Virus record (IMG/VR): IMGVR_UViG_3300049793_000366
Coordinates: 248,001-312,000 of that record
Length of the DNA stretch: 64,000 nucleotides
Direction: 5' to 3' (one strand)
How positions within the stretch are numbered: the stretch's first letter is position 1; the number at the start of each line of letters is the position of its first letter. The notes beneath the pieces were generated by a model, which was not told where the DNA came from, did not search any database, and saw only the letters and a list, made by a program, of their open reading frames with translations. Position numbers and translations under genes: made by a program. This document shows positions 10,649 through 57,100 of the stretch, piece after piece.

Positions 10649-13600
10649 ATGGCATTTTTAGGTAAGTATAAGATATATCAACCAGTTGACTTTGGAACTA
10701 CAATTGATCCAAACTATGTAATACAAACATCACTTGATAGTCAAGTATTTGATGATATTACGAGTTTGGAAAATTTTGATAATGTTATTGGTAGAATCAG
10801 TGGTACGGTTGGATATTATTCTAATATACGTAATGAGATGTCTTTGCTTATTGATAACTTTGGTGGATTCTTAGACCTTAGTACTGCTGAACAAGAAATT
10901 GTTTCAAGACATTTCTTAGTTTCTAAAGCTGATAGAGATACAATACATACAAGTGATGAACAAATAGCAAACGCAAAAAGAATACAAGCATTATTAGCAA
11001 AGGAAAATGAGGATGCTGGTTATAACTATAATGCTGTTGTATATGCTGATAGTAATTTAATAGCTGATGTTACCGATTATCAATCAATTGACTATTTATA
11101 TACACCACATTTAACTGTTGGTAGTATTTCATTTGGTGCTAGCGGCCCAACTGGTGGTTCTGATTTATATGCTACAATTTCAACTAAGGTTGATACAACT
11201 GATAATAGACTACACTACCAGAATGTTCTTAAAGTTAAGAAAAATCCTGGTGTTGGTGAATATTCAAGTATTAATGCCGCTTTAGCTGCTATTACTGATA
11301 ATAGTACAACTAATAGATATAGTATTACTGTTTATCCAGGTAAATATACTGAGAGTACAATTTATACTAAGCCTTTCGTTGAGATATCGGGTATAGCTAA
11401 CTTCAACACAATAATTGAAGTTAATGATTATACTAAAGATGTTGTTGTGTTATGTCCTAATACATCATTTAATAATTTCTTATTAACGGGAGCAACAGCA
11501 ACAGGAGCAGCTGCTTTCGCGGTAACTGCTTCTTTTGGACCTGGTGCTTCTTGTGAAATTAATAACATATCATTCCTAACAGTTAATACTATTTTTAGGT
11601 CTGCTCTTAGTGTTGGTCAATTTGCAATAGTTGGATTTTTAAATTCTAATGTTTCAACGTTTTCTAATGTTAAGAAAGGTATTGATATAAGTGGTGCTGG
11701 TTATACAATATTATCGTGGGCTAACTCTAAGAACAGCGTTGTTTCAACTATTAGTGATTTTGCTGAATTGAGAGGTTCTAATAATCGATTAATATTTACT
11801 GATTTTGGTTTGATTACACAACCTGCTTTGGGTGGTACAATGTCCAATTTCGTAAGAATATATGATGGTGCTACTATTGACTTAGTTGGTGTTTCTATTG
11901 ATGGTGCTGGGACAGCACTTAATAACGAAAATACTGGTTCTGGTGTTAACATACGTGCGAATGGATTTAATATTATTAATTCATTAACGAGTGATGTTGT
12001 AATTGGTCATCCATCTACAGTTGGTAACTTACAGGGTATTGTTGATTCATCAAAAGTTACAATAGATTCTACTAATTTTAGATTATCATATTCAGAACCA
12101 ACTGGTGGTTTCGTAATTACAGGTGATTTCACACTTGGTCAATCACAAGGTACGTTGGTTGAAATGGGTGCTATCATCGAAAGAGCATTAACTATGGGTG
12201 TTTATGAAGGTGGTGATATAGCTACTGTTTCAGCAAGTGGTTTTACCGTTTCGGTTGAAGCTGGTTTTGGTTACCTATGTGATGATGGTGAAGCAGACCA
12301 TACTATTAGAAAGATTTTCTGGGATAATGATTCAATTGCGGTATCACCATATACTAGTGAGTTCTTATATTACAACTCAAGCGGTACTTTATTAAAGTCA
12401 GCAACTAGATTAGAGTCTCAACATTATATATTCTTAGGTAGAACTGTTACTGATAGTAGTTCTATTGTTTCAATCATACCATCTAAATTATATGGTATGC
12501 ATTATAGCAATGATGTTGATACATTATTGAGAGATGGTTTTGGTTCTATTTATAAGAGTGGTTCATTGGTAAGTGAAGGAACATCTGATAGAACATTAGA
12601 TGTTACAAGTGGTGTTTATTACAATACCCAATATAAATACACACCTTCTGGTGGACTTCCAATTACATTTGATGCGTTTTATAAAAATGGTAGTGGTGGA
12701 TTTACAATAAGTCGTAATCAACAAGTATTACCTAATAGTACATATGATAATGGTTCGGGTACTTTAGTAAGTGCTACTGCTGGATATTATATGAAGTTCG
12801 CACTATACGTAGTTGGTGATGGTGCCAATGAAAAATATTTCATAGTACACCCACAAGAACAACATCTTACCCAGTTAGCAGCGGAACAAGGTAGTATTCC
12901 AATTGCTCCTTCATATTTTGATGCAAGTATTACATTGATAGCGAGTATCGTTGTTCAACAAGGTAATAGTAGCATAGTTAGTATATTTGATAATAGACCA
13001 ACATTATCATTTAAGGCAGAAAGTGTAACAGCATTATCTACACATGGTAACTTAGCTGGTCTATTAGAAGATGACCATCCTCAATATTTATTAGGTAATG
13101 GTACAAGAGCAATGAGTGGTAACTTAAACTTAGGTAACAATAATATTACCAATGTTGCTAATATAAATGGTATTAGTATTGCTACACACTCAAGTAGACA
13201 TTTACCAAATGGTGCTGACCCTCTTACAACTGGTACACCATCTACGGTTGGTACATCAAATCAAGAAGGTATTGGTAATGCTTTCTCAAGACAAGACCAC
13301 GTACACGCACATGGTTTTCAGACAAATGAATTACATCATGCCTTATCAACAACAGTATCACATGGTTTCATGTCATCTGTTGATAAGTATAAACTGGACT
13401 ATATACCAGGCAGTAGTGCAAGCTATTTCTCAGAACCTTTATATGTTAATGGTTTAACGGTTTCTGTTTTTCAAGCTACATCAACTCAATCTGGATATCT
13501 ATCTACGACTGACTGGAATACATTTAATAATAAGCAATCAACATTAACATTTACGAATGGTTTAACAACATCGTCTGGTACTATATCGTTAACGACTACT

Positions 13601-16231
13601 GGTGTGTCATCTGGTAGCTATACATTCTCTAATGTGACTGTTGACCAATATGGTAGACTTACTTCTGTTTCTAATGGTAGTCAAGCTACATCAACTCAGT
13701 CTGGATATTTATCTACGACTGACTGGAATACATTTAATAATAAATTAGGTACATCACTTACTTCATCTTATATACTTGTTGGTAACGGTTCTAATGTTGC
13801 TGTTGGTGCTACTGTAAGTGGTGATGCTACATTATCAAACACTGGTGTATTGACATTAAATAGTTCTGTTGTGAATGATAGTAAAATAGCATCACATACA
13901 TCTACTAAGATTACAATTACTAATAAGAGTCAATTAAATACAAGTGTTGTATATTCTGACCAAGGAAATACATTTAGTGTTGCTAAACAATCTTTCCAAT
14001 CAGATGGTACTTATGCTCCAATTAAACTTGGTGGTTTAGCATCTGACCCATCTTCATTAGAGGCTGGTGACTTTTGGTATAACTCAGCAGATCCTTCACT
14101 TAAGTTTAGAACTGGTAGTAATACTACACGCATTGTTGTTGATACCAGATTATCACAAACATTGTATAATAAGACTCTTGAATCACCAATGATTGCTACT
14201 ATTAGTAATGGTGGTGGTAGTATATCTGTACCATCTATATCAGTAATTGATACAATGGTTCTTAGAAATACTGCGGAGACATTGACAAATAAAACGTTAA
14301 CTGGTCCAACTATATCTTATATTTATAATACCGGAACAGTAACATTACCGACATCGACTGATACATTAGTTGGTAGAAATACAACAGATACATTGACAAA
14401 CAAAACGTTAACTGGTCCGACTATATCTACTATTTATAATACCGGAACATTGACACTTCCTACCACAACAGATACGTTAGTTGGTAGAGCTACTAGTGAT
14501 GTATTAACAAATAAGACAATTAGTGCTTCTGGTAATACAATCAGTGATGCTTCAATAGCAACTGGTGATTTATTGAAATCAAACGGTTCTAAATTCGTTA
14601 GATTTGGAATGGGTTCACCTTTACAAGTATTACGTGTTAATGCTGGTGGTACTGATTTAGAATATGCTAATCCATCTGCTGGTTCCGGAACTGTTACGAG
14701 TGTTGGTATGACAACATCGGGTGTCTTATACAACGTTAATACAACAATAACAACAAGTGGTACTTTCTCACTGACCTTATTAACACAAAATGCTAATTTA
14801 ATATTTGCTGGTCCATCTACTGGTGGTGCTACTACTCCATCATTTAGGTCATTGGTTACGGCTGATATGCCATCAACTGTTGTATTAAATAATCAATCAA
14901 ATACAATAACAAACACTGCTAATACATCAGTATTATCATTGGTTAGTAGTAACGCTTCATTCACGGGTGACGCATTAACTGTAAATGTTAGTGGTAACTC
15001 TGTATCACCATATAACCTATTTAAATTAACATCTACTTTATCTGGAACAAGTACTGATAAGTTAGTTGTTAGTAAAGAGGGTATGTTGAGAGTTCATGTT
15101 GGTACTGCTTCAATGATAACGGCACCAACATATTCTATTGCTCACTTTGTATCAAACATTGGTGCGAGCGCGAGCGTAATTGTCACTGATACGTATGGTA
15201 CTATTGGTGCTGGATATATGGGTCGTAGAGCAAGAGGTACATCTGATGCTCCAACAGCAGTTCAAACAAATGACATATTGACATCATTTATTGGTAGAGG
15301 TTATGGTGCTACTAATATGAATACATCAGATGGTTATATTAGGATTGTGGCAAGTCAGAACTTTACCGACACAGCACATGGTACTTATATTTCCTTCTAC
15401 ACAACTGGTACATCCAGTATTGTTGCTTCTGAGAAAATGAGAATAGGAGATGATGGTACTATCACATTAACAACTGCTCTACCTATTACGTCTGGTGGTA
15501 CTGGTCAGATAACACCGAATGATGCATTAAATGCTTTATTCCTATCTGCTACTGCCTCTGGTACAGATACATACACAGTTACATTAACTGGTATTACATC
15601 CATAACAACTGGTACAATTATTAGAATTGGCTTTACAAATGCCAATACAAGTACTGCTACACTTAATGTTAACTCATTGGGTGCAATAGCCATTGTAAAA
15701 GAAGGTGGTATAGCATTGAGAGCATCTGACATTGGTCCTGGTTCAATACATCACTTGATGTACGATGGTGTAAGCTGGACTATTGTGGCATCAAGTATGA
15801 CTCTGAAGTCTATTGTATTCTTCTCACCATCACAGGTTACTTCTGGTACAGCATTCACGCTTACTTTAGTTTCTAATGATAGAGTTGTTAGAACTTTATC
15901 TGGGTCTAACGTAACCAACACATCATATACTGAGATTGCTTTACCAGCAGATTTCATATCGTTTCCAACAGGAGCTTATAGAGTTGATTCGAATAGGTCT
16001 GGTAACGGTACTCTTACGGTTACTATTGGTAAAGGTGGAGTAGCAGATGCTACGATGAATGCATTAAGCTTAGTTGCTACTGCTACCAACTCAACTTGGG
16101 AGACCAAAAGTGGTACACCAACTAGTTCATATACTGCTGGTGATAGATTGTTAATTACTATGACTACAACAACTTCTGGTAACACAACAACGGCTGTTGG
16201 TAACGTAATACTTCAATATTATGGTAGATAA
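10649..16231 (+). CDS. Large tail fibre / tail spike protein (1860 aa)
   Basis: YSSINAALAAI..I.VYPGKY.E beta-helix cap, DDHPQY, RQDHVH, TLTNKTL repeats, two 70-aa repeats; AATATATA at 10637-10644. Confidence 0.8.
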   Translation: MAFLGKYKIYQPVDFGTTIDPNYVIQTSLDSQVFDDITSLENFDNVIGRISGTVGYYSNIRNEMSLLIDNFGGFLDLSTAEQEIVSRHFLVSKADRDTIHTSDEQIANAKRIQALLAKENEDAGYNYNAVVYADSNLIADVTDYQSIDYLYTPHLTVGSISFGASGPTGGSDLYATISTKVDTTDNRLHYQNVLKVKKNPGVGEYSSINAALAAITDNSTTNRYSITVYPGKYTESTIYTKPFVEISGIANFNTIIEVNDYTKDVVVLCPNTSFNNFLLTGATATGAAAFAVTASFGPGASCEINNISFLTVNTIFRSALSVGQFAIVGFLNSNVSTFSNVKKGIDISGAGYTILSWANSKNSVVSTISDFAELRGSNNRLIFTDFGLITQPALGGTMSNFVRIYDGATIDLVGVSIDGAGTALNNENTGSGVNIRANGFNIINSLTSDVVIGHPSTVGNLQGIVDSSKVTIDSTNFRLSYSEPTGGFVITGDFTLGQSQGTLVEMGAIIERALTMGVYEGGDIATVSASGFTVSVEAGFGYLCDDGEADHTIRKIFWDNDSIAVSPYTSEFLYYNSSGTLLKSATRLESQHYIFLGRTVTDSSSIVSIIPSKLYGMHYSNDVDTLLRDGFGSIYKSGSLVSEGTSDRTLDVTSGVYYNTQYKYTPSGGLPITFDAFYKNGSGGFTISRNQQVLPNSTYDNGSGTLVSATAGYYMKFALYVVGDGANEKYFIVHPQEQHLTQLAAEQGSIPIAPSYFDASITLIASIVVQQGNSSIVSIFDNRPTLSFKAESVTALSTHGNLAGLLEDDHPQYLLGNGTRAMSGNLNLGNNNITNVANINGISIATHSSRHLPNGADPLTTGTPSTVGTSNQEGIGNAFSRQDHVHAHGFQTNELHHALSTTVSHGFMSSVDKYKLDYIPGSSASYFSEPLYVNGLTVSVFQATSTQSGYLSTTDWNTFNNKQSTLTFTNGLTTSSGTISLTTTGVSSGSYTFSNVTVDQYGRLTSVSNGSQATSTQSGYLSTTDWNTFNNKLGTSLTSSYILVGNGSNVAVGATVSGDATLSNTGVLTLNSSVVNDSKIASHTSTKITITNKSQLNTSVVYSDQGNTFSVAKQSFQSDGTYAPIKLGGLASDPSSLEAGDFWYNSADPSLKFRTGSNTTRIVVDTRLSQTLYNKTLESPMIATISNGGGSISVPSISVIDTMVLRNTAETLTNKTLTGPTISYIYNTGTVTLPTSTDTLVGRNTTDTLTNKTLTGPTISTIYNTGTLTLPTTTDTLVGRATSDVLTNKTISASGNTISDASIATGDLLKSNGSKFVRFGMGSPLQVLRVNAGGTDLEYANPSAGSGTVTSVGMTTSGVLYNVNTTITTSGTFSLTLLTQNANLIFAGPSTGGATTPSFRSLVTADMPSTVVLNNQSNTITNTANTSVLSLVSSNASFTGDALTVNVSGNSVSPYNLFKLTSTLSGTSTDKLVVSKEGMLRVHVGTASMITAPTYSIAHFVSNIGASASVIVTDTYGTIGAGYMGRRARGTSDAPTAVQTNDILTSFIGRGYGATNMNTSDGYIRIVASQNFTDTAHGTYISFYTTGTSSIVASEKMRIGDDGTITLTTALPITSGGTGQITPNDALNALFLSATASGTDTYTVTLTGITSITTGTIIRIGFTNANTSTATLNVNSLGAIAIVKEGGIALRASDIGPGSIHHLMYDGVSWTIVASSMTLKSIVFFSPSQVTSGTAFTLTLVSNDRVVRTLSGSNVTNTSYTEIALPADFISFPTGAYRVDSNRSGNGTLTVTIGKGGVADATMNALSLVATATNSTWETKSGTPTSSYTAGDRLLITMTTTTSGNTTTAVGNVILQYYGR
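13471..13745 (+). repeat. Two further copies of the 210-bp repeat unit
   Basis: TCAAGCTACATCAACTCA..CTGGATAT at 13471 and 13681. Confidence 0.85.
14270..14520 (+). repeat. 111-bp (37-aa) TLTNKTLTGPTI coding repeat
   Basis: ATTGACAAAyAAAACGTTAACTGGTCC at 14281 and 14392, plus a degenerate third copy. Confidence 0.8.
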
Positions 16232-24591: not shown

Positions 24592-25053
24592 ATGAAACAC
24601 TTGAAGTCATTTAAGATATTTAATGAGTCTTATTCAACAAGGGCTAACTTTAATCCACTTGAACCTGTTCATATGCCACACTCTGATAATGTTTATGGTT
24701 ATAGAATGCCTGGTGAGGGTGGTGATGATAGCGTTGTTGGTGATGAGTTTAGCAAACTAATGGTTTCTAAGTTAGTTTCTGAGGATGACATTCGTTGGTC
24801 TACTTATAATGCTGTTAAAATAGCACTTGATTATTGGGATGCGATAAGTGATGAAGAATGGATAGAAGTTGACGAAGAATTTAAGCAACGTGTAATAGAA
24901 AATCCTGAGAACCCAGCACCAGCTATAATTAAATTTCTGAAAAGATATGATAACTTAGATGAAGAGTTACTAAGACTCAAAGCTAAGATTGAAGGATTTA
25001 TCGAGAAGGATAAAGGATTCTTCGGTAGATTGAAAGACCGTTTTAAAAAGTAA
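24592..25053 (+). CDS. Late protein with capsid-targeting-like N-terminus
   Basis: MKHLKSFKIFNES. Confidence 0.7.
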   Translation: MKHLKSFKIFNESYSTRANFNPLEPVHMPHSDNVYGYRMPGEGGDDSVVGDEFSKLMVSKLVSEDDIRWSTYNAVKIALDYWDAISDEEWIEVDEEFKQRVIENPENPAPAIIKFLKRYDNLDEELLRLKAKIEGFIEKDKGFFGRLKDRFKK

Positions 25054-26290
25054 AATACTCATCTTGCTTTGCATACTTTCTCTGTTCGTGTATTATCTTA
25101 CGAGCTTTCAAAGACATGAGTAAAACATCATCATCTGATATATCAGCATTTGATATCTTACACACTCTCAATATACCGTTTGTTGTTTCAGTATCAGTGA
25201 GTTCTTCTAATTTTTTAATAACCAATATTTGCTCATTGAAGTTTAATCCTTCTAACGTTATTTCAATCTGTTGTATGTTTGTATAATATTTGTTTAACAG
25301 TTCAATATCTGAGTCAGATGTAGTTGATGTTAAATATTCCTTATCTCTTGACCACATATGACCGAACTTATCCCACATACGTTCTCTTACAGGGCTATCG
25401 AATACATTTCTAATATAGAAATCCAAATCATTCAGAGAATGTAGATGTCTAACACCAGTATAACCAGATGTAAGTAAAATCTCTGATAATAGATCCTGAT
25501 TCCTGGTTCTATCAACCGTGTTGAATGTCCATAGCTTACCATTTGTCTCACCCTTCCAACCAGCGTCTTTCCATTCATCCGTATCAACAGATTGTAGTAT
25601 GATATTATATTCGGCTAATTCTTCAATCCACTCGAACTTAATCATATTCATATATTTCTCACCAAAGTAATGTCTGATGTAATTTTCAAAGCCTTGTTTA
25701 CGAGCTATTGTTAAATATTTAAATTCGATTTTCTTATTTAACTTAGCACCTAACTCATCTCTCTTCTTAAGAATTCTAACAAGTGTATGAGATGGTGTAT
25801 TGGCACAAACTACTTTCAATTCACTCGTTTTTATGAATTCATCGAAATGTTTTGAGTAAAACAATTCACCAGTTTCTAAATCATAACCAACTTGTGTACA
25901 GTTTATATCAAATGATTCGATTATCAGATTAGGGTCACATATGTTTGATGTATATGTAACCGTATTCAAAAGACCATCTCTGGAATGTTCTTCTATGCGA
26001 TAGAATTTATTATGACTTGACTCGTATTTAATACCAGAATATGTATCAATCTTCCTGGCCTTTTCTTTTTCAATCCAAGTATATTTTTTGTATCTATCCT
26101 TATCTAAAGATGAAGACTCAATGAATCCACCATAAACAAAAATATCAATGTCGTTGACCGGTATTGATTTTCCTGTAACCTTTTCCCAGATTTTATTTGC
26201 GATGGCACCACCGGCTAATAATCCTTGCTTTGGTAATTGTTGTAATTGGTTTAGTTCGTTGATTATCTCTGGAACATATTTAGTCCACAT
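25043..26290 (-). CDS. Nucleotidyltransferase (CCA-adding / poly(A) polymerase head-like)
   Basis: LLAGGAI...NDIDIF...SFDINCTQ. Confidence 0.7.
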   Translation of the reverse strand: MWTKYVPEIINELNQLQQLPKQGLLAGGAIANKIWEKVTGKSIPVNDIDIFVYGGFIESSSLDKDRYKKYTWIEKEKARKIDTYSGIKYESSHNKFYRIEEHSRDGLLNTVTYTSNICDPNLIIESFDINCTQVGYDLETGELFYSKHFDEFIKTSELKVVCANTPSHTLVRILKKRDELGAKLNKKIEFKYLTIARKQGFENYIRHYFGEKYMNMIKFEWIEELAEYNIILQSVDTDEWKDAGWKGETNGKLWTFNTVDRTRNQDLLSEILLTSGYTGVRHLHSLNDLDFYIRNVFDSPVRERMWDKFGHMWSRDKEYLTSTTSDSDIELLNKYYTNIQQIEITLEGLNFNEQILVIKKLEELTDTETTNGILRVCKISNADISDDDVLLMSLKARKIIHEQRKYAKQDEYFTF

Positions 26291-26292
26291 AA

Positions 26293-26841
26293 TTAAATTT
26301 TATTAAGGTTGATAGTTCGTGTTATATGTTTGCATATCTCATCTGCTGCTAAATGGATATCGTCTTTTTCAATATTATATTCTATGTAAGGAATTTTATT
26401 ATCAGTCAATAGTTTTTTGTATTCACTATCTACTTGTAATGCACCTTCTAATGTTTGTGTTCTACCGTTTGGATTGTATTCAGTAGAACGACATAAATGA
26501 TAGTTTACTGTGTTTAATTTAAAAAACTCATATAGAACTAAGTCTTTTAAATATGTGTTATTTGTTTCATCATATATGATTGAATTAATCAAAGGTGAAT
26601 CAGTAATAACAACATCTACTTTACCATTTAATCTATATAATCGACTGTGTTGTTTTCCGAAAATATAAATTTGATTTTTAAGCTTATGAAAACTCTCTTC
26701 CCAAACAACATCCTTTGCATATTCTAATGCCATTTCGCAATCGATATTTCTCTTCTTTAATATTGCGAATATTTCAGCACAGAAGGTACTTTTGCCAGTA
26801 CCAGGTCCTCCAAATAAATTTACAAATAATGTTTGTTTCAT
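26293..26841 (-). CDS. NadR/Ttd14-type AAA kinase-like protein
   Basis: NLFGGPGTGKST, EYAK, ITDSPL, GRTQ. Confidence 0.8.
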   Translation of the reverse strand: MKQTLFVNLFGGPGTGKSTFCAEIFAILKKRNIDCEMALEYAKDVVWEESFHKLKNQIYIFGKQHSRLYRLNGKVDVVITDSPLINSIIYDETNNTYLKDLVLYEFFKLNTVNYHLCRSTEYNPNGRTQTLEGALQVDSEYKKLLTDNKIPYIEYNIEKDDIHLAADEICKHITRTINLNKI

Positions 26842-26855: not shown

Positions 26856-28301
26856 TTATAGTCCACCGAATATATCCATAATCACGGTCAATCTTGATGT
26901 TATCTCAGGCATACCTAATGGATCAATAATTGAATTGATAGGTGATAAGATACATTTAAAAAATTGTGTGTCGTAATCAATTTCTGGAGCATACTCTACT
27001 GGATGCGATCCTCTTATGTATGCGAATACGTTATTGTCACCCTTACAATAGTAATATTTAATCTTAGTACCAGATTTGATAAATGTGTATTTATCTTGAT
27101 ACTTTTGATTCTTATATAGTAAGTGATTATATAACGCCGCTGCTTTTACTGCAAAGTGCGCTCCACTCACGAATTCTAGTTTCTCTTTATCATCAAGAAC
27201 TTTCTCGTTGTAGTTAGAACATGATGACTGCATTGCTATCTCATCGATATCTGCTAATTCAAATTCTTTACGTAAGCCTTTTACTAACTTTAATAATTCT
27301 TTGATGTTGAATGATTCTGGATTTGTAAATAAATATTTTACAATATCTACAATCTTCTCCCTTGCGAAAGCTGGTGTTGATGAACGTACAAGCTCTACAC
27401 CTTTTGGATATAAGTACTTGAAACGTTCGTGTGGAATACCATCCTCCCAAGATACGTGTTGTATGTATTTCTTCTTAGCGATGTTTATAATAGACTCTGA
27501 TACACGCTCTAACTCGAAATCTTCCTTATTGTCTACACCGAATGAACCAGCGTATTCTTCTAATGAATCTCTAAAGAATTGTGCTATTCTGAATTTATCA
27601 ACAGCGTGTACAAAATCTAACTCTCTGAAAAAGTTAGGGATAATCTTAGTAGTAACATCTTTTAAATCCTTACTACCAACAAAGTAGCCATCAATAACTA
27701 ATGTTTCTATATTATTATCAGCTATAACATTTTTAATGTTTTTTAAGCCACCTATACCAAAGTTATCATACTCTGCTATGTAACCAATGAAACTTGGATT
27801 ATCAATTTCAATATCAATTTCATTTCTAAGTAATATTGCAAATGGTTTATCGATAGTTGATAAGAACTCATCATTGATTACTTGATTTTTCCAATCACAT
27901 CTTTTTATAGCTGGACCAAATCCAACAAACACTGAGTCGGTATCAGCGTAGATACTAACTTCTAAATCGCCTGGTTTTTCTGGGTCTATTGGTGTTAATG
28001 GTTTTACATTTTTAATATAAAGCATATTATGTAAATCAGTATCAAGATGCCATTGATTCCACCAATAATCTTGAGTTTTCTTAGACATGGTTTTAGTTAA
28101 ATCACGTCCTTGTGCTGTTATCGTACCAGCTACTTGGTTATTGAATAATATGAAGTGTTGATTAGCGAAGGCTCCATATGAACCATTTAGTACGAGTTTA
28201 AGAGCTAATTGCAAGGCATTATAATAATCCACTTCTTTTTTAAGTGTATTAGCCTTGTTTTTAAGTTCTTCTATTTTATTTATCTTTTCCGTCCTTGTCA
28301 T
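26856..28301 (-). CDS. Family B DNA polymerase, C-terminal subunit (split gp43B-like)
   Basis: KLVLNGSYG (motif B), YADTDS (motif C), AKKKY, KGVE..RSSTP; no exonuclease or motif A. Confidence 0.9.
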   Translation of the reverse strand: MTRTEKINKIEELKNKANTLKKEVDYYNALQLALKLVLNGSYGAFANQHFILFNNQVAGTITAQGRDLTKTMSKKTQDYWWNQWHLDTDLHNMLYIKNVKPLTPIDPEKPGDLEVSIYADTDSVFVGFGPAIKRCDWKNQVINDEFLSTIDKPFAILLRNEIDIEIDNPSFIGYIAEYDNFGIGGLKNIKNVIADNNIETLVIDGYFVGSKDLKDVTTKIIPNFFRELDFVHAVDKFRIAQFFRDSLEEYAGSFGVDNKEDFELERVSESIINIAKKKYIQHVSWEDGIPHERFKYLYPKGVELVRSSTPAFAREKIVDIVKYLFTNPESFNIKELLKLVKGLRKEFELADIDEIAMQSSCSNYNEKVLDDKEKLEFVSGAHFAVKAAALYNHLLYKNQKYQDKYTFIKSGTKIKYYYCKGDNNVFAYIRGSHPVEYAPEIDYDTQFFKCILSPINSIIDPLGMPEITSRLTVIMDIFGGL

Positions 28302-28341: not shown

Positions 28342-29292
28342 TTATGATACTAATTTTTCCAAATTATTTATCCGCTTCCATTCTTTAGTTCCCATAAATA
28401 TTAGCTCATATTCTTGTAGAAAAGCTGCATAACTACCCATAACTTTTATGGCATCTTCTGCCCATTTGGAATCTCTGTTTGGTACTAAGTGATATGGAAT
28501 CCATTGTTTGACGTATATGTTTTTATCATCATAAACAAGGTCTTTGAAATGATTCTCACCATTAGGAGTACCGAGTATTGTTATCTTAGTGTTTTTTCGC
28601 GCTATTGCTGTTAGTTGATATACTTGACTGAATCTTCTTACAGCAGTAGGTGATAAGTGACCATAACCATCTACAATAGTAAAATCATAAGTCATACCCA
28701 AAGTTGAACCAGCACTGCCGTAGAATGTTCCTATTTTAATACATGAGCCATTATCGAATACTATTCTACTATTTGACATACTGAGTATACCAAGTTTAGC
28801 ATAGTAAGGTAAATTCTCATATAGAATTTTAATTTTTTCTAAAATTCTTTTAGCACCATCTATTTTATTATCCGTTATAAGTATTTTCTTATCATCCTGA
28901 TATGCATAGTGTAAAGCTTGTAATGCCAATATCAATGTCATTCCACTTTGTCTGGAATTGATTATAGTGTTAAACCTATTTGATTTGTAATTTTGTAAGG
29001 CTTGTGCTTGATATGGACGAAGTGAGACTGATGCGTAGCCTAAGTTACCAGTTAATGTTTTTGTAAGAGATAATAAATACTCAGGATCATCTTGTATTTT
29101 AAGTTTAGATGCTATTTCTTCTTCTGTGTAGTCGAATATAATACCAGATGCGCGATGTGCCTCATTTCTCCTATAATATGGTTGTGTGCGTGGGTATTCT
29201 GGTTCAATACCTAATAAACCTCCTAATTTCTTATCTCGGTTCTTTTGTTTCTCACTTCTACATTCTAATAATTCTGTTGACCAATTACTCAT
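28342..29292 (-). CDS. Degenerate terminase large-subunit ATPase domain (gp17-like) with R-tags at both ends
   Basis: LRPYQ, SRQSGMT (K>M), IVDGY (DE>DG), GTPNGENHF, FLQEYEL; no nuclease domain. Confidence 0.8.
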   Translation of the reverse strand: MSNWSTELLECRSEKQKNRDKKLGGLLGIEPEYPRTQPYYRRNEAHRASGIIFDYTEEEIASKLKIQDDPEYLLSLTKTLTGNLGYASVSLRPYQAQALQNYKSNRFNTIINSRQSGMTLILALQALHYAYQDDKKILITDNKIDGAKRILEKIKILYENLPYYAKLGILSMSNSRIVFDNGSCIKIGTFYGSAGSTLGMTYDFTIVDGYGHLSPTAVRRFSQVYQLTAIARKNTKITILGTPNGENHFKDLVYDDKNIYVKQWIPYHLVPNRDSKWAEDAIKVMGSYAAFLQEYELIFMGTKEWKRINNLEKLVS

Positions 29293-29854
29293 TTATAAAA
29301 TCGCGTACTATTTTCTCTGCTTCAAGCAGTGCAATATCTAAATCACGATTTAGTATTTGATAGTCGAACTTATCTGCTGTTTTTAGTTCAGTTTCCGCTT
29401 TATCTAAGCGTCTTTCTATACTCTCAGGTGTTTCGGTTCGTCTTAACTTCAATCGTTCTTCTAAGTCTTTAATAGAGGGTGGTAATACTATTATTGATAT
29501 GGCTTTATCACCAAATTGCTTTTTAAGATTTAAAGCACCAATAACATCCATATCAAATATCACATCTTTACCATTTTCCCATATTCTATTCACTTCTGAC
29601 TTTAATGTACCATAGAAATTATTGGTATATACCTCTTCCCATTCAACAAATTCTTCTTTTTCAATTTTATTTTTGAACTCATCAATTGATAGAAAATGGT
29701 AGTCTTTACCATCGATTTCGCCCCTTCTTATTGGGCGACTCGTTGCTGATATAGAAAATGATATTTCATTACTTAAAATACTCAGCAAATGCTTTACTAT
29801 CGTGGTTTTACCAGCTCCAGATGGTGCCGCAAATATTATTAATTTACCCTTCAT
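29285..29854 (-). CDS. gmk: Guanylate kinase
   Basis: APSGAGKTT, SATSRPIR.GE.DG.DYHF, YGT, DMDVIGA. Confidence 0.95.
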   Translation of the reverse strand: MKGKLIIFAAPSGAGKTTIVKHLLSILSNEISFSISATSRPIRRGEIDGKDYHFLSIDEFKNKIEKEEFVEWEEVYTNNFYGTLKSEVNRIWENGKDVIFDMDVIGALNLKKQFGDKAISIIVLPPSIKDLEERLKLRRTETPESIERRLDKAETELKTADKFDYQILNRDLDIALLEAEKIVRDFINE

Positions 29855-29874
29855 AGACTTAATTACTTTAGAAC

Positions 29875-29909
29875 TTATATTCATAAAGAGATGATTGTTT
29901 CAATATATA
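29875..29909. promoter_or_regulatory. Back-to-back middle (minus, AAAC-N15-AATATAA) and late (plus, AATATATA) promoters
   Basis: Motifs at 29875-29900 and 29902-29909. Confidence 0.6.
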
Positions 29910-29913
29910 CTAC

Positions 29914-30390
29914 ATGATTAATTTTTTAAAAATGTTGAAGTTGATTCTCAGGTCTAAAATAAATCATTTCATATCTATTGATTCTGCTACTTACTTTAAG
30001 TGGCGTTATTTGATACAGATATTAATAAGACTAAATAAGAACTACGTAGCGTGTGAGGTATTCAGAACGCGATACAAGGGACTAAGGAATATTGTGATTA
30101 TTGGTTTAAAGTGGAATGGTAAGAATGTAAAGAGAAGAACAAATGGGTACGCAAAGCAGTGGATATTAAGACATAAGAAGTATAACTGCCCTTATTGTGA
30201 ACAAAAGCTAACACCAGTTAATGCTACTAGTGACCATATTGTACCAATATCAGTTGGTGGTAATAATTGTCAAGTAAATATAATAGTTTGTTGTAAAGAT
30301 TGTAATGGTGAGAGAGGTGATAGAGAATTCTATTCCTACTTAAGATATAAGAATAAAAAATATGCGAATATTAAATTCCCATTTTTATAA
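29914..30390 (+). CDS. HNH endonuclease
   Basis: CPYC...DHIVP.S.GG.N...N...CKDCN. Confidence 0.9.
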   Translation: MINFLKMLKLILRSKINHFISIDSATYFKWRYLIQILIRLNKNYVACEVFRTRYKGLRNIVIIGLKWNGKNVKRRTNGYAKQWILRHKKYNCPYCEQKLTPVNATSDHIVPISVGGNNCQVNIIVCCKDCNGERGDREFYSYLRYKNKKYANIKFPFL

Positions 30391-31087
30391 GTGCTAACTC
30401 TCTTGATACGCTTTTCATCTCATTATATTGCTCTTCGTTTACGATGACACTAAGCTCTTTCAATTTACCAACTTCGTGTAGATTGTAACCACCTCTTATT
30501 TCAACCTTGTCATCCGTTACTGATGCGTCAACAACTGATAATTCAAGTATTGATGATTTTTTACCGAATAAAATTCGAGTATCGAAATAATTTATATATG
30601 GGTCAACATAGAGTGGTATATTATTCCATCTACCGACTACATCTATTATACCAGCACTACCATTTCTAATTCTTGCATCTGGTGTGTAATACATTGAATC
30701 TTGTAGATATGAACCAATTTGTGCATTTGTTATAATAAAATCAGCTTCTCTGGTTTCATACGCTAACCTTATATCTAAATCTCTAAGTATATCTTTATAT
30801 TCAAATGATATAACGCCATTTATATGACTAAATACAAATCCTGCTTTTTCAGCACTGTCATAAATTGTTTGACATAGTTTCCTTTGAATTTGTGTGATGT
30901 ATTGTTCTATTATAGCAGTAGTAAATCGTCCTTCACCAACTGAATCGAATGCTGGGTCGTTTCTATTTATAGCTATGCTAATACCAATCTCTTCTGATAG
31001 TGTATTTACTTTTGGTGTAGACCAATTAAATATTTCTATTATCTTTAACTTGTTTATTAAATTTGCTGTTATATTTTCTTTTAGCAT
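30371..31087 (-). CDS. Truncated gp23-like major capsid paralog with degenerate R-tag (start uncertain)
   Basis: ADFIITNAQIGSYL...VGRWNNIPLYVDPY...ILFGKK resembles the gp23 C-terminal half; ends SRELALIKMGI. Confidence 0.6.
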   Translation of the reverse strand: MLKENITANLINKLKIIEIFNWSTPKVNTLSEEIGISIAINRNDPAFDSVGEGRFTTAIIEQYITQIQRKLCQTIYDSAEKAGFVFSHINGVISFEYKDILRDLDIRLAYETREADFIITNAQIGSYLQDSMYYTPDARIRNGSAGIIDVVGRWNNIPLYVDPYINYFDTRILFGKKSSILELSVVDASVTDDKVEIRGGYNLHEVGKLKELSVIVNEEQYNEMKSVSRELALIKMGI

Positions 31088-32234
31088 CCGGATTGTACTC
31101 TTTTTTTTGCTTAGGGATCCACACCGCATCGTATTGGTCTCTAGAGAAAAACTTTGGTAAGTCTAACTTCTTATATGGGTCACCACCTGTAAGCTGTGCT
31201 AACTTATTTAAATCTTTTATAGCTGATATCCTTTGTAAGTAAGTAAATGGGTCTGATGGCTTTTTCTTCTCTATTAAATTATCAAACAATTTCTTCCAAA
31301 GAAATACAGAGAAGCCTTCTTTTAATTTCATTGCTGAGTTCTTATGTCCTGTACCATCATTATCAAAGAAATATTGCATATCGAGATTGGCTTCTATGAA
31401 TCTCATGTCAGTATTAACACCAACAACACCAATAGAATTAGGATAGAACAATGAGTCGAGATATCCTTCGAATACTGTTACTTTTTCCATAACATCGATA
31501 TTTAAAATACCAAAATAATAAGATAGCTTATTATATAGTACCAATTCGTTTAAGTCAAAGTCTGCTAATTTTTCCTCACCATATAACCATTTGTATAAAC
31601 TCTCATAATTATAGATTTTGAAAAATCTGGCTCTACCATCTTTCATATTTCTAATCTGCATCCCTAATACTTTACCACCTCTTCTATTCAGAAGACATAT
31701 AATACCTTCTTTTGATTCAGCATTTCTCCAATAGTTACCTTCATAAATATTACTAATTACATCTTCTGGTATACCTCGTTTTGTAACCAGGTAGTGATAT
31801 GTTGGTGAACCTTTTTCTACTGGTTTAAAATCTGTTATTGGTGTTTCGTATGTATTGAATAGCTTAGTCAATTCTTCCAAAGAAAGAAGTTTACTCATCT
31901 GTGTCTCAACCGCATTGTCCTCGAAGTCTGAATAAGTTACATTACTTGCTATGTGTTCTATGATTTCCAATTTAACACCAGGGTCCAATTGTTGATTGAA
32001 ATCTCGACACATCTTATCAAACGATGTTCTGTGGTCACAGTTAAAGCAAACGAATATTAATTTATTCCACCATATATTTCCTCTCTTGGCATTTCGGTCA
32101 GTAGAAGAGTCACCACAATATGGACAAGCAAAATTCATCCTATCGTGGTAGTCATATATACGTCTCTTCTCAACCAATTTAAATTGGGTGTTAAGTATGT
32201 CTTGAAGACTATTTTTTATATATGATTTGTCCAT
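31026..32234 (-). CDS. gp61: DNA primase (gp61-like)
   Basis: CPYCGDS...CFNC zinc domain; Toprim FEGYLDS, FFDND. Confidence 0.9.
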   Translation of the reverse strand: MDKSYIKNSLQDILNTQFKLVEKRRIYDYHDRMNFACPYCGDSSTDRNAKRGNIWWNKLIFVCFNCDHRTSFDKMCRDFNQQLDPGVKLEIIEHIASNVTYSDFEDNAVETQMSKLLSLEELTKLFNTYETPITDFKPVEKGSPTYHYLVTKRGIPEDVISNIYEGNYWRNAESKEGIICLLNRRGGKVLGMQIRNMKDGRARFFKIYNYESLYKWLYGEEKLADFDLNELVLYNKLSYYFGILNIDVMEKVTVFEGYLDSLFYPNSIGVVGVNTDMRFIEANLDMQYFFDNDGTGHKNSAMKLKEGFSVFLWKKLFDNLIEKKKPSDPFTYLQRISAIKDLNKLAQLTGGDPYKKLDLPKFFSRDQYDAVWIPKQKKEYNPDAKRKYNSKFNKQVKDNRNI

Positions 32235-32236
32235 AA

Positions 32237-32298: not shown

Positions 32299-32300
32299 AA

Positions 32301-32612: not shown

Positions 32613-32625
32613 AAATGATCCAAAA

Positions 32626-32657: not shown

Positions 32658-32685
32658 TATCAAATAAATCTAAAAACTGAAAAAC

Positions 32686-51130: not shown

Positions 51131-54100
51131 TTATTCTGGTATTATGAAAACTGCTATCTCTATTTCTACATCTATTGGATTGAAACCACCACCACTTCCT
51201 GGTGCTGATACTATCGAGTCAGTACTTAATACGACATTATCAATGAATGAGAAGTTCTGGTTAGTATAATCAATATATGGAGCTACCGCAGTGTATGGTA
51301 TCTGTAAACCATAGTTAATATTAGATGCTGTCGCATTCGTATATTTATAGAACGGTATCATGTCTACCTCATAGAACTTTAGATTATCTAATACAGCAGA
51401 GAAAGATCCACCGATGTACATATCCATATCAACTCTATTATAGAAATATTCCATTTTTTTCATTGTTGGATCTGGATTACTTCTCACTGGATTATGCTGA
51501 TACATATACGCACCATCTATATCAGCATTGAAGTATAAATTTTCCAATGGACCTATTGGTATTACAACTTCAAATCCTAATATTATAATGGTTATAAATT
51601 CAACTCTATTACCATACATATCACCACCATATATTCCAGCAGTACCAGACCAAGTATAACTATCAAACTCAACCATTGTGTATCTACCAATTTCTAAACT
51701 ATCCAATATAGAATCATGTGTTAGTATTGCTAAGTTACTCTCATCAGTTGAGAAAGATACTCCTTTTGGTTTTGTATTATTTGGATATCCATCCATTATG
51801 AATAATGCTGGTTCGCTAATACCATCCACTAACGATGGATTAGTTACATCTTGATATAATGCCTTACTAAGAGTACCATAAACATTAGATACTGTCCAAC
51901 CATACGTGTAGATGTTTGGTCTGTTGAATTTGGAAGCTCTATCAATAAAATCGACATATGTATTATACTTATAACCTAAATTATAATCTCTAAATGTGAG
52001 TGAATTACTATCACGCATATTAGATACTGATTCTAAAATATCACTTGTAATTAAACCTTGATAGTTTGTTCTAGTATATTCATTACCACTATCATCTAAT
52101 ATAATTTGGTCAAAGAAAATATTAGATACATACTTAGTATCATAATTGATATCCATCCAAGAATTATATAAATGTGTTGTTGATGTTGTAGCAACGTCCA
52201 TATCTTTGAACTTCATCTTCTGAATAACAGATGTAGAAACAGTTCCAGTTTGAGTAGCTATAAATCTACCACCTTCGAAGCTACCATCTATCCAGTGTGT
52301 CTTATCCATCACTGTTAAGAAAGGGAATCCAGCAAATAACCCTGAATTCCAAATACCAGTAAACTTACCATTTAAGAAAGCACCTGATAACCAAATATTC
52401 TTACTGACATGAATTTTATGACTCTCTGAATCTTTAACAATTTCATGTATAGGGAAATTAACCATTGCTTCAACAGTTAAACTTCTCGATGTTGGATTAG
52501 AAACAATTGTATAGTAACCTCTTATTAGTTTTCTTCTCTCATTAATATCATGTGATGTGACGTTACTAATAGAAACAACATCACCAGCAGTTAAACCACC
52601 GAATGTTGCACCAGTAACAGTAAATTGCCATCTACTGCGTGTTATTTGAATACAGCGAGTAACATCATCTAATTCAATATATGATGATGCAGTAGCGTAT
52701 TGTACACCGCCTATTATGCTTGTAGTATCAACTCTCCATCCATTATTCCAAACACCATTTTCCCAAACACCACCTAAGAATCGGCCATTACCAGCTTTTG
52801 TTCTGATACCTTTACCACTAACTGTTGCTGAGTATGTCCAGCTACCATAGCTTGGTAATGGACCAACTGTACCTACAATTGAACCAGAACCATAAACGAT
52901 TGGTGTGTTCAATATGGTATTATTCAGTGTACTATATGTGCCTGTTGTGTTGAACGCATTCCATAAGTGTAAATTGGTATTTGTTGCCGAAGTATCAATT
53001 TTTACGTAGTTTAATATTTGATGCGCTCTTAATAATAACTCAGTTGTTTCTTTTGAGTATGTTCCAATATTTCCACTGCCGTTTGATACGCTACCAACTA
53101 TATAGTCAGAGCCATACCAGTTACCATTTTTCCATGTACCATCTTTCCACACTATATTCCTTGCGAAACCATACCACCAAACACCATCTTTCCAGAAAGC
53201 ACCAGACATTGTACCATTTTTCCATAAACCATTCTCCCAACATGAATATGCGAATTCACCATCATTCCATATACCGTTATTCCAGTAACAAGATTGTGTA
53301 CCATATTCAAATGTACTCATTGTAGCATTGTTAGCTTTATATGAGTAACCATCAGAACCTAAGTATGTATCTACACGATAGTCAGTTCTTGACAACGGTG
53401 TTGGTAGTAAACCACCCGCTGTACCGTAAATATAATTTAAACTCAATGGGCGAAGAACAAACGGATTGAAATAACCATTTGTCCATGTACCATTCTTCCA
53501 AACACCATTCATCCACATAGAGTTAGTGAACTCAGCATTAGAGTGGTCTACTGTACCATTTATCCATTTGACATTTTCGAATAAAACTTTGTTGTTATTC
53601 TTAACTTCATCCTTACGTCTAATTAATGTTGTGAATAATTTCTTATCCTTATTTAATTTTCTTGTATCATCGATTACAGTTCCATTTACCCAAAGACCTC
53701 TGAAAGAAGCAGTAGGATTCAAGAAGAAGTTATTGAATTGTGTCTTACCAGCAACAGCAGAAAAAGTAGCTGCGTTACTTGTAAATGTACCTTTCATAAA
53801 TACACCATTCTTCCAAACTTTACCTTGAAATCTACCATCGTTAAATGAACCATCAGCCCAAGATGAATCAAATACACCATTGTTGAAATTACCATTATGC
53901 CAGTTAGTAATAAAGTTATGTCGAACTTCATCAAATGGTGCATATGTTAATTCACCTTGTGTAATAATCTGTGCGTGGTCGAAGCTATAGCCATCGGCTC
54001 CGAAGTAACCATTATTGAAGTTACCATTCATCCAGAACGCGGCATTTCCTTGAAAATAACCACCATTAAAGTTACCGTTTTTCCAAACAGCGAAATTCTT

Positions 54101-57100
54101 AAATATGGCCCCACTTTCCATAACAGATGAATTACCAAATGGTAAATCAGTTATTACTACTGAATATGTTCCTGTCTTCTGAACACCTGTAATTACAGCC
54201 GCATCATTATATGATGTGTTTAATGAATCAGAGAATTTATTAATGAATATTTTAGATCCGGTTCCGTAAACACCATTATCAACATTTGTAGAATCATTAA
54301 TAAATAATCCTAAATTACCAGACACATAACTTGTGTCAATCCAATAGACTGGTGCTGGTGAATTTCCTTGAAATATACCATCATTAAATTCTCCATTCTC
54401 CCAAATAAATGTATCTAACCACGTAGAACCCAGTGTAGCATTTCTAGCAACACCATTATACCAATGACCAGATAACATAGAATTCTTCTCTATGCTAAAT
54501 CGAGTATCACCGAATTCACCATTATAGTGATTACCAAAATACCAATATGTATTATAAATTTTACCATTTAGCTTATCACCATTATACCAAATACTGTTGT
54601 ACATTTCTCCATTTTCGAATGTACCGTTATGCCATGTATAACCATAAGGAGACTGCATCCAGCTTCTATATAAGACAGGATTTACCGGATTAGTAGTCCA
54701 AGTCCATACGATTGGTTCAAAGTCACCAGTAGCGTTCTGATTCGTTGAGTCAGCGAAAATACCGTTCTTAAATATACCACTATTCCACATAGATTGCTTT
54801 ATCAATCCATTTGTAAATGTACCCTTAACCCAATATGAGTCATAAACTATACCACTTGTAAATGTTGGATAGTCGAATACACAATTGTAGAAAATACCTG
54901 ATTTGATATTGGTATTATTACCAAGTCTTGTTTGCTTGAAGTATGTGCCATTAACTGCATCATAATATTGAGAGTCAACATCAGTTACATCAGATGTGAA
55001 TAAGAAATTAATTACTTTAAGTGTATCAACATTAGTTCTAACAAGTGATGTATCAAAATTATTAAAGTTTCTATTCGCTATCGTAGAGTTTTTGAAGAAT
55101 GTTCTTGCAAATACACCAGACTGTACAGTTGACTTGTTTATTTTTACTTTACTAATACTTAAGAAGTTTGGCATATTCATACCGAAGTAACTACTTATGT
55201 TACTAGGGTTTGTAGTAGCATCATATGTATAGAAGAAGCCTGAGTTAAATCCATAATTAGTTTGGATTAACAATCTTGTGTTATACATAGTATTTAAGTT
55301 AGTAATTGCCTCAGAATCTAAAGCATCTAAATATAAAACTCTCGTTGAGCCAGAGAATGCCATTGTTGTAACAGTATAAGCACCATTCAATGAATATGCT
55401 TGTGTCGTTTCAGACATAGTAGCAGACATAGGATCAGGACTTGAAACTGGAATCCAAACAATATTATCTAAATAAATAACATCACCTGGTGTGAAGTTAT
55501 TATCTAACCAACTCGTATTAAGAGCTGAATATTTTAAATTTATCTGTAATGATTGTGTTGAACCAACTGAAATATCCAATTGATTATTAGCATTCTGACT
55601 AACTTGATAGTTGTAGTTATTAATTAAGTTACCATACTCCCATGTTGAGTTATCCATGTAGCCAGATTCATACTCAGCATCAATAATATATGGTGTTTCA
55701 ATTACATCAAGTCTATTGAATTTCAATACCCAATCATACCACTGTTTAGCAGTAGTAATTGATGCTATGAATCCTGGGAAATTATATTCCATAGTGATAT
55801 CCAATGACGGCTTCTCTATGTCAGCAACCTGTGTTGTAATTGGTAATACAAGTCCTATTCCAAAGAATGTGAAGTACGCAAATGTAGTTTCATCTCTCAC
55901 TGTGTTTTCAGCCGCAGTTTTAACAACGCAGTTAATTTCACCAGCCATTGAAGCACCACTGAACATTTTTATTTCTTCGTTGTACTTATTTAAGTAAAAT
56001 ACATTTTCGAACTTATCGAATGTTGCATCCTTGTCAAATTTAATACCCTTTAAATAGAAAGATTCAAGGTTTGATAATTTATGAATATCTGTTTCATTGA
56101 TGTATAGCTTATATCGAACTGTTTGCTTACCGTCTATCGTTGTGTAAAAGAATTTACTAATATCAGTTATAACAATAGATGAATCGGCTTTGAATTTTGA
56201 ATTAGATAAAACTGATTTAGAAATATGTGAATTCAAAACACTTGAATTTGAAAACTTACCTTCTAATACATTAGTTGATTGAACCTTTACGTTTGAATAG
56301 TTACCATTGTAAATAAATGAATCAGCTATTTTACCACTTTTGATAGTAACATCAGTTGAGAATGTAGTTCCTGTTATATAATTTGGTACAGCAGAAGCAG
56401 TGTATGATAATTTACCCAACTGTGCGTTAATGAAGTTACCATTAGTAACTACACTTGATTGTATAGAACAGTCAAGGAAATAATTATAACCATTCCCTCT
56501 ATTATTTGATTTATCTGTTGTTTGTTTTGCTAATCCATTATCAATAGTTGAATAGTAGGAGTCCTGTACAATAGAATCTGATAATGATTGAATATCACCT
56601 GATATCCAGTTAGTATTAACAGCAACACCAGATTGCCAAAGACTCTTTTCGTTTTTCTTCCAATTAATTCTATTATCATATGAACCATATACACCATCTG
56701 ACCAAGAACCATTAAATTCACCTCTTCTGAAATTTGATTTGGATATTATTGCTTCTCTGTATGTATGATTAACCTTCCATGTCGCAGTAGGTGAATCAAA
56801 TTCATATACAAACGATGTTTTATAATCAGTAGCATTACCACTACCATTGATATGCGTAAAATCATTACCCATAACAACTACGTTACCAGATTGACTTGCT
56901 GAAACATATGTATTGATATTATTAATATCGTATATGTTAGTCATATTAAACCAAGAGTATGTTCCTGGTGTAGGCTCATTCAATACATAAAATCCAACAC
57001 CTACGTTTCCGAATATTGTTGAGTATGTACCATTTGAGTATAAGATGTTATCTAATCCAATTTCAAATCTGTATTGTTCAGTTGATGTTGAATTTACTCT

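What the first reader, a model, noticed from the sequence alone, without database searches (positions are those of the whole stretch)
30371..31087. Truncated major-capsid paralog behind the primase gene
SEEN: ADFIITNAQIGSYLQ...VVGRWNNIPLYVDPY...RILFGKK matches the pattern of gp23 GNFII.S...G.L.G...VYID.Y....VGYKG. The protein is only about 240 aa, has no delta domain, ends in a degenerate tag (RELALIKMGI) and lies in a replication operon.
Basis: partly seen in the sequence, partly recalled or inferred. Interest (0 to 1): 0.6.

Follow-up and report, generated by a model that had tools for sequence, protein, structure and literature searches.

The report
Compact capsid-protein paralog in a megaphage
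A soil megaphage carries, just behind its primase gene, a small fast-evolving copy of its major capsid protein that still has the whole HK97 capsid fold; it is most likely a minor shell subunit like the T4 gp24 vertex protein, and not a broken fragment.

Summary
Window 30371..31087 (-) encodes a 238-aa protein. Its residues 108-211 match residues 423-542 of the phage's own 558-aa gp23-type major capsid protein (MCP): 30% identity, E 3e-11, profile-profile probability 97%. The MCP gene lies 183 kb away.

"Truncated" is misleading. A confident AlphaFold model (pLDDT 90, pTM 0.83) shows a complete, compact HK97 fold over residues 1-218. It has N-arm, short E-loop, spine helix, and A and P domains. 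It lacks only the MCP's N-terminal delta region and insertion domain, and it adds a C-terminal helix. The best structural matches are T4 gp24 (Z 14.1, 13.3, 12.7), then HK97 gp5 (about 12) and T4 gp23 (11.6).

The C-terminal "tag" is a conserved helix, not a degenerate one.

The gene belongs to a clade of about 45 proteins of 200-280 aa from megaphage metagenomes, separate from true MCPs and from a second, roughly 300-aa paralog clade. This genome has one member of each. The order primase, paralog, convergent HNH recurs in four genomes, but in other megaphages the counterpart lies 5-7 kb downstream of the MCP.

It evolves far faster than its neighbours (41% identity against 75-89%).

Function is inferred: most likely a gp24-like vertex or minor shell subunit (about 0.4). 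Non-virion roles are not excluded.

The parts
30371..31087 (-). CDS of the compact HK97-fold MCP paralog (P0001, 238 aa plus stop). An in-frame alternative ATG at 31129 would add 14 residues.
   Evidence: ORF list and translation. A public gene call gives the identical 238-aa product. The N-terminus MLKENI is shared with homologs P0002 and P0003.
30968..31087 (-). Residues 1-40: N-arm helix (2-14) and a short E-loop hairpin (strands 21-23 and 32-39). This is the least confident part of the model (pLDDT 73-83).
   Evidence: AlphaFold model. VIA-align aligns model residues 1-216 to HK97 gp5 residues 120-383.
30854..30934 (-). Residues 52-78: the long spine helix of the P domain.
   Evidence: Helix 52-78 at pLDDT 87-93. 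The whole-fold alignments to T4 gp24 and HK97 gp5 span it.
30455..30766 (-). Residues 108-211: the block with detectable sequence similarity to the MCP C-terminus (MCP 423-542). It includes the FII.N...LQDS and YVDPY motifs (A-domain core and C-terminal P-domain hairpin).
   Evidence: BLASTP E 3e-11. hhalign 97%. PHROG 28442 E 1.3e-5. tblastn hits fall in the MCPs of three huge uncultured phages.
30374..30436 (-). Residues 218-238: an extra C-terminal amphipathic helix that lies outside the structural alignments to solved capsid proteins. It is conserved in the subfamily.
   Evidence: Helix 218-235 at pLDDT 90-97. Invariant R229 and L231-I238. Motif found in P0001-P0004, P0018, P0035, P0067, P0087 and the LR756502 counterpart. 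Structural alignments to capsid proteins end near residue 218.
31026..31087 (-). 62-nt overlap between the 3' end of the primase gene and the 5' end of the paralog. This suggests a two-gene transcription unit with possible translational coupling.
   Evidence: ORF coordinates. The same overlap of about 53 nt is seen in L007 and L010.
31026..32234 (-). Upstream DNA primase gene (402 aa). Context, not part of the paralog.
   Evidence: PHROG 47 DNA primase, E 1.2e-15. 80%, 79% and 69% identical in L007, L010 and L008.
29914..30390 (+). Convergent HNH endonuclease gene. Its 3' end overlaps the paralog's stop region (30371-30390). Context.
   Evidence: Pfam HNH_5 E 6.7e-10. Same convergent position in L007, L008 and L010. 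89%, 72% and 68% identity.

Best explanation
The gene encodes a complete but minimal HK97-fold protein that arose by duplication of the phage's gp23-type major capsid protein. It lost the N-terminal delta (scaffold/propeptide) region and the insertion domain, and it gained a C-terminal helix. It is one of three HK97-fold proteins in this megaphage: the 558-aa MCP, this 238-aa protein, and a 263-aa second paralog. Shown here: homology to the MCP, the complete fold, conservation as an intact gene, fast divergence, and two alternative genomic positions in different megaphages. Inferred: it is a low-copy subunit of the capsid shell that co-assembles with the MCP at special lattice positions. The most likely position is as pentamers at the eleven non-portal vertices, as T4 gp24 does for gp23. 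A subunit without an insertion domain or propeptide would fit a penton that does not need the scaffold-directed hexamer pathway. In this clade the gene has moved from near the MCP gene to a position behind the primase.
For: Homology to the genome's own MCP. A confident full-length model, pLDDT 90.2 and pTM 0.83. All top Foldseek hits in PDB and BFVD are HK97-fold capsid proteins, and the alignments span almost the whole protein. The best VIA-align matches are the T4 vertex protein gp24 in three entries: Z 14.1 (rmsd 3.3, 204 aa), 13.3 and 12.7. HK97 gp5 scores about 12 and T4 gp23 scores 11.6 and 11.4. The BFVD hits include a 297-aa 'head vertex protein' of Vibrio phage nt-1 (TMq 0.60). The ESM Atlas structure match is to a Gp23 cluster (TM 0.73). 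The profile search found 134 relatives. The tree places P0001 in a 200-280 aa clade (SH-aLRT 98) separate from true MCPs (99) and from the roughly 300-aa clade. In LR756502, LR745206 and contig Ga0502760_0004128 the counterpart lies 5-7 kb downstream of the MCP gene, as expected for a gp23/gp24-type duplication. The lack of a long propeptide matches gp24, of which the N-terminal propeptide is removed during head maturation (PMC5694885); that this propeptide is only about 10 residues long is from my own knowledge of T4, not from a tool.
Against: There is no direct evidence that the protein is in virions. No cultured relative carries it: PTm1, pT24, PAU and SCTP-2 have the same MCP type but no short paralog. 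Here it is co-oriented with, and overlaps, the primase gene in a replication/nucleotide cluster, and that arrangement is conserved in four genomes. This suggests expression with replication genes rather than late genes. It diverges much faster than the MCP: 25-42% identity, while MCPs across the clade stay at 65-69%. Lak phages and LR756504 have this MCP type without any short paralog, so it is not essential for such capsids. T4 gp24 keeps the insertion domain and this protein does not. A second paralog (PAR2) is an equally possible vertex candidate. The Z-score advantage of gp24 over gp23 and gp5 is only 1.5-2.5 units.
Confidence: 0.4

Rival explanations
1. Non-virion decoy or antagonist. The protein is made with the replication genes and mimics the capsid protein, so that it engages or blunts host immune sensors that recognise the phage capsid fold. 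The neighbouring catalytically dead terminase-ATPase paralog could do the same for terminase sensors.
For: Conserved linkage to the primase in four genomes. It has the lowest identity of 25 shared genes in the region: 41%, against 75-89% for primase, PolB, HNH and Gmk. The gene cluster also holds a TerL ATPase-only paralog that has lost the Walker A lysine and the Walker B glutamate in all three genomes examined. That capsid and terminase proteins trigger bacterial defences such as CapRel and Avs is general knowledge, not something tested here.
Against: Entirely inferential; no sensor, partner or expression data exist. In other megaphages the counterpart is near the MCP gene rather than the primase. 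Fast evolution is equally expected for a low-copy structural paralog.
Confidence: 0.12
2. It forms a separate small HK97 shell (an encapsulin-like compartment), or acts as a transient assembly factor that nucleates or shapes the very large capsid without remaining in it.
For: Its size and fold equal those of encapsulin shell proteins, and several encapsulins match at Z 11-11.8. It has no propeptide. The extra conserved C-terminal helix could be a docking element.
Against: No cargo-type gene (ferritin-like, peroxidase or similar) with a targeting peptide lies beside it; the neighbours are primase, HNH and guanylate kinase. By sequence it is nearest to gp23-type MCPs, not to encapsulins. The self-association prediction gave no answer.
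Confidence: 0.1
3. It is a decaying remnant of a duplicated or split capsid gene, with no function.
For: It is much shorter than the MCP, and only its C-terminal half shows sequence similarity to the MCP. Other genes nearby are split, for example PolB.
Against: The ORF is intact and has full-length homologs at 42%, 40%, about 28% and about 33% identity in separate genomes, with conserved ends and synteny. The fold prediction is confident and complete. The real MCP is intact elsewhere. The genome uses the standard genetic code.
Confidence: 0.03

Closest known systems
Bacteriophage T4 gp24, the head vertex protein and paralog of gp23 (PDB 1YUE; chains in 7VRT and 5VF3)
   Same: Both are HK97-fold paralogs of a gp23-type MCP encoded in the same genome. 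This is the best structural match (Z 12.7-14.1, about 204 aligned residues). Neither has a long delta domain. In several megaphages the counterpart lies downstream of the MCP gene.
   Different: gp24 is 427 aa, keeps the insertion domain and lies immediately next to gene 23. This protein is 238 aa, has no insertion domain and carries an extra C-terminal helix. It lies 183 kb from the MCP gene, behind the primase. It does not reach the Pfam Gp23 threshold. A vertex location is untested.
HK97 gp5, mature or prohead II major capsid protein
   Same: Same minimal domain set (N-arm, E-loop, P domain, A domain) and a similar size. Model residues 1-216 align to gp5 residues 120-383 at Z about 12, rmsd 3.2.
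   Different: Only 8-9% identity. gp5 is the sole shell protein of its phage and has a 103-residue delta domain. Here a separate 558-aa MCP exists.
Encapsulin shell proteins (for example M. xanthus EncA, SrpI, family 2 encapsulins)
   Same: Compact HK97 fold of about 260-300 aa with no propeptide; Z 10.5-11.8.
   Different: Encapsulins are cellular, are encoded beside cargo genes, and show no sequence relationship to this protein. This protein is phage-encoded and is demonstrably derived from a gp23-type MCP.
Short 'head vertex protein' of Vibrio phage nt-1 (UniProt R9TJ44, 297 aa)
   Same: A short gp23/gp24-family protein annotated as a vertex protein. Foldseek TMq 0.60 and TMt 0.50 over the whole length.
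   Different: The annotation is by homology only. Its length is closer to the roughly 300-aa paralog clade (PAR2 type) than to the 200-280 aa clade of this protein.

Membership tests
HK97-fold capsid protein superfamily | Fold with N-arm, E-loop, P domain with a long spine helix, and A domain | tested here: met
   Model at pLDDT 90.2. 193 PDB Foldseek hits at E<=1e-3, with the top-ranked (listed) hits all capsid or encapsulin proteins. 477 chains at Z>=8, aligned over model residues 1-218.
HK97-fold capsid protein superfamily | Self-assembles into capsomers and closed shells | tested here: inconclusive
   Complex prediction with 4 copies returned 'no answer'.
Pfam Gp23 (PF07068), T4-type major capsid/vertex proteins | Sequence score above the family's gathering threshold | tested here: not met
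   No Pfam hit at E<=0.1. The genome's MCP scores 92 bits. Several proteins of about 300 aa found by the profile search do pass. The relationship of this protein is seen only through its own MCP and through profiles.
T4 gp24-type vertex protein | Paralog of the MCP encoded in the same genome | tested here: met
   E 3e-11 against the own MCP; a separate clade from MCPs in the tree.
T4 gp24-type vertex protein | Gene adjacent to or just downstream of the MCP gene | tested here: not met
   Here it is 183 kb from the MCP gene, behind the primase. Counterparts in LR756502, LR745206 and Ga0502760_0004128 lie 5-7 kb downstream of the MCP gene.
T4 gp24-type vertex protein | Retains the gp23-type insertion domain | tested here: not met
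   In 238 aa, the secondary-structure elements of the model account only for the HK97 core plus one C-terminal helix. Alignment to gp24 covers 204 residues within gp24 residues 21-422.
T4 gp24-type vertex protein | Forms pentamers at the 5-fold vertices of the virion | not testable with these tools
   The phage is uncultured. The only run holding the sequence is one soil-metagenome DNA run.
Encapsulin systems | Shell gene next to cargo gene(s) that carry a targeting peptide | tested here: not met
   The neighbours are primase, HNH, guanylate kinase and a TerL-like pseudo-ATPase.

The most novel reading that the evidence does not exclude
The compact capsid paralog and the neighbouring catalytically dead terminase-ATPase paralog are not virion parts. 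They are mimics, co-expressed with the replication genes, of the two phage proteins that bacterial immune sensors most often recognise. Megaphages would use them as decoys or antagonists of capsid- and terminase-sensing defence systems.
Probability: 0.1. Interest if true: 0.85.

Novelty: new variant of a known kind. Interest (0 to 1): 0.5.

Why it matters
Megaphages with genomes of 0.5-0.7 Mb must build very large capsids, and none of this clade is cultured, so their head architecture is unknown. This genome encodes three HK97-fold proteins: a full-size MCP and two compact paralogs. The 238-aa type forms a broad, fast-evolving family. That gives concrete candidates for specialised shell positions such as pentons. 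It also extends the gp23/gp24 duplication theme of T4 to a minimal subunit with no insertion domain. If the protein turns out not to be in virions, it would be a rare case of a capsid fold recruited to another job inside a phage genome. For annotation, these proteins currently match nothing in Pfam or NCBIfam and are labelled hypothetical.

Tried and rejected
- Pfam and NCBIfam scans of the protein gave no hit. A profile search of PDB sequences gave only chance matches at E 0.47.
- Complex prediction with four copies returned 'no answer'. This is not evidence either way.
- The sigma-70 promoter scan of 29000-33000 was at chance level (19 found, 20.7 expected). Three terminator-like hairpins were found, none informative for the paralog.
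- Rfam found nothing in 20000-42000.
- The search of sequencing runs found only one soil-metagenome DNA run, probably the source, and no RNA. Expression could not be examined and read laying was not used.
- An alternative genetic code as the cause of short genes is rejected. Stop-codon use among ORFs of 150 codons or longer (stop included) is TAA 304, TAG 39, TGA 37, and the ORFs are intact.
- The idea that this is an exon or half of a split MCP is rejected, because the MCP is intact at 95.7 kb.
- Literature searches on jumbo-phage and megaphage capsid paralogs found no description of such compact MCP paralogs. Chimalliviruses build their pentons from the MCP itself.
- A prohead-protease-type [L/I]xE motif near the N-terminus (LKE at residues 2-4) occurs in 30 of 45 family members, at 2.2 times the density seen in the rest of the proteins. 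This is too weak to use.

Full report
**Setting.** The window is G000:C1:248001-312000 of a 507,910-bp virus record. That record was cut from a 711,805-bp contig. GC content is about 32%. The only public run holding the region is a soil metagenome. Stop-codon use is standard. This is an uncultured megaphage with a T4-type head module: a 558-aa gp23-type MCP at C1:95750-97426 preceded by a scaffold gene, and a 723-aa TerL at C1:74253-76424.

**The observation.**
- An intact ORF occupies window 30371..31129 (-). The conserved start is the ATG at 31087, giving 238 aa (P0001).
- Residues 108-211 align to MCP residues 423-542 at 30% identity, E 3e-11. Profile-profile probability is 97%.
- In a phmmer search of all ORFs of the genome, the MCP is the only other significant hit.
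- tblastn against about 50,000 phage records finds only the C-termini of the MCPs of three huge uncultured phages.
So are the small size, the lack of a delta region and the position directly behind the primase, with a 62-nt overlap.

**What it is structurally.**
- A profile of P0001 and its one close homolog was searched against 1.84 billion representative proteins. It found 134 relatives.
- With 88 of these as the alignment, AlphaFold gives a confident model: pLDDT 90.2, pTM 0.83.
- The top Foldseek matches in PDB and BFVD are HK97-fold capsid proteins or encapsulins (one annotated as a prohead protease), and the alignments span nearly the whole protein.
- VIA-align places model residues 1-218 on the whole HK97 core. 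The scores are:
  - T4 gp24: Z 14.1 (rmsd 3.3, 204 residues), 13.3 and 12.7
  - HK97 gp5 residues 120-383: Z about 12
  - encapsulins: Z about 11.5
  - T4 gp23: Z 11.6 and 11.4
- The protein is therefore not a C-terminal fragment. It is a complete, minimal HK97 fold with N-arm helix 2-14, short E-loop, spine helix 52-78, and A and P domains.
- Compared with the MCP it lacks the N-terminal delta region and the insertion domain. It adds a helix at 218-235.
- That helix carries the supposedly "degenerate tag". P0001-P0004 all end in ALIKMGI, and a related K-S-L-Q-R-D-I-K-I motif occurs in more distant members.

**The family.**
- A maximum-likelihood tree of 109 rows resolves three groups:
  - a 200-280 aa clade that holds P0001, P0005, P0006, P0035 and the LR756502 counterpart (SH-aLRT 98)
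  - the true MCPs (SH-aLRT 99)
  - a 280-340 aa clade (SH-aLRT 92)
- The 280-340 aa clade attracts a second paralog of this genome, PAR2 (263 aa, C1:199835-200626). PAR2 sits on a long branch.
- PAR2 also folds as a complete HK97 protein (pLDDT 76.8). Its best matches are T4 gp23 (Z 13.6-16.1) and gp24 (13.4).
- A family profile finds exactly three HK97 genes in this genome.
- LR756502 (642 kb) has the same trio. LR745206, LR756500 and LR756501 each have a strong P0001-type gene.
- Lak-A1, LR756504 and the cultured 220-440 kb phages PTm1, pT24, PAU and SCTP-2 have only the MCP.

**Genomic context.**
- Four genomes share the order primase, paralog (overlapping the primase), convergent HNH, then a TerL-like 306-318 aa protein and the PolB polymerase half. 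These are the window, L007 (709 kb, 42% identity), L010 (about 33%) and L008 (soil, about 28%).
- In LR756502, LR745206 and a 24-kb JGI contig the counterpart lies 5-7 kb downstream of the MCP gene. In LR756500 it lies about 22 kb away.
- The replication-cluster position is therefore clade-specific and probably secondary.

**Evolutionary rate.**
- Between the window and L007 the paralog is 41% identical, the lowest of 25 shared genes. The figures for other genes are primase 80%, PolB 80%, HNH 89%, Gmk 75% and the TerL-like protein 57%.
- MCPs across the clade stay at 65-69% identity to this one.

**Interpretation.**
- Shown: homology, complete fold, conservation as an intact gene, and rapid divergence.
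- Inferred: function.
- The closest precedent is T4, where the gp23 paralog gp24 forms the eleven pentameric vertices (summarised in PMC5694885).
- Several features fit a low-copy shell subunit, most likely the penton: the gp24-leaning structural matches, the missing propeptide, the MCP-proximal position of counterparts, and faster evolution than the MCP. I put this at about 0.4.
- Points against:
  - the conserved coupling to the primase gene
  - absence of the paralog from some phages with the same MCP type
  - the missing insertion domain
  - PAR2 as a competing vertex candidate
- Rival readings are a non-virion decoy (0.12), an encapsulin-like shell or transient assembly factor (0.10), and a dead remnant (0.03).
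- The decoy idea draws on a side observation. The neighbouring TerL-like protein has lost the Walker A lysine and the Walker B glutamate in all three genomes compared, whereas the real TerL keeps both.

**Comparison with what is known.** The protein works like, and probably descends from the same kind of duplication as, gp24. It fails two gp24 membership features (insertion domain and adjacency to the MCP gene) and the Pfam Gp23 threshold. Its defining property, a vertex location, cannot be tested here. I found no description of such compact MCP paralogs in the jumbo-phage and megaphage papers searched. I rate it a new variant of a known kind, of moderate interest.

Noticed in passing
window 28342..29292 (-): A 316-aa paralog of only the ATPase domain of the large terminase. 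The Walker A lysine is lost (SRQSGMT, against SRQVGKT in the real TerL at C1:74253-76424). The Walker B glutamate is also lost (VDG, against MDE). The homologs in L007 and L010 have lost the same residues. This looks like a conserved pseudo-ATPase inside the primase/PolB cluster.
   Followed up: partly
window 26856..28301 (-) and G000:C1:~102 kb (+): The family B DNA polymerase is split. The polymerase (C-terminal) half, 481 aa, is in the window. The exonuclease (N-terminal) half lies in a 510-aa open frame (stop to stop) about 170 kb away. The same C-terminal-only gene is seen in L007 and L010.
   Followed up: partly
window 29914..30390 (+): The HNH endonuclease gene convergent with the paralog is one of the most conserved genes of the region: 89%, 72% and 68% identity in L007, L010 and L008, always in the same position. 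It therefore does not behave like a mobile homing endonuclease. Its HNH domain resembles those of Cas9 and IscB.
   Followed up: partly
G000:C1:199835-200626 (+), outside the window (L005:1075-1866): A second compact HK97-fold MCP paralog (263 aa), downstream of a 255-aa ORF that by eye looks like a glycosyltransferase (not scanned). Model pLDDT is 76.8. Its best matches are T4 gp23 and gp24. A homolog lies in LR756502 at 241156-241848, 12 kb from that phage's MCP gene.
   Followed up: yes
window 25043..26841 (-): Downstream of the PolB half lie an AAA_28-type P-loop protein (182 aa) and a 415-aa protein whose homologs carry weak or faint Gad2 Pfam hits. Both are conserved in L007 and L010, and L010 also has a ClpP gene there.
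   Followed up: no
window 10649..16231 (+) and 51131..57526 (-): Two giant ORFs of 1860 and 2131 aa. Neither was examined.
   Followed up: no
whole record: IMG/VR classes the 507,910-bp record as a provirus cut from a 711,805-bp contig, and a relative sits on a 709,085-bp contig of assembly GCA_040384045.1. Whether the remaining 200 kb or so is also phage was not checked.
   Followed up: no
tree: P0032 (659 aa) and P0120 (619 aa): Two MCP-length proteins fall inside the short-paralog clade rather than with the MCPs. They may be MCPs of another lineage or fusions.
   Followed up: no
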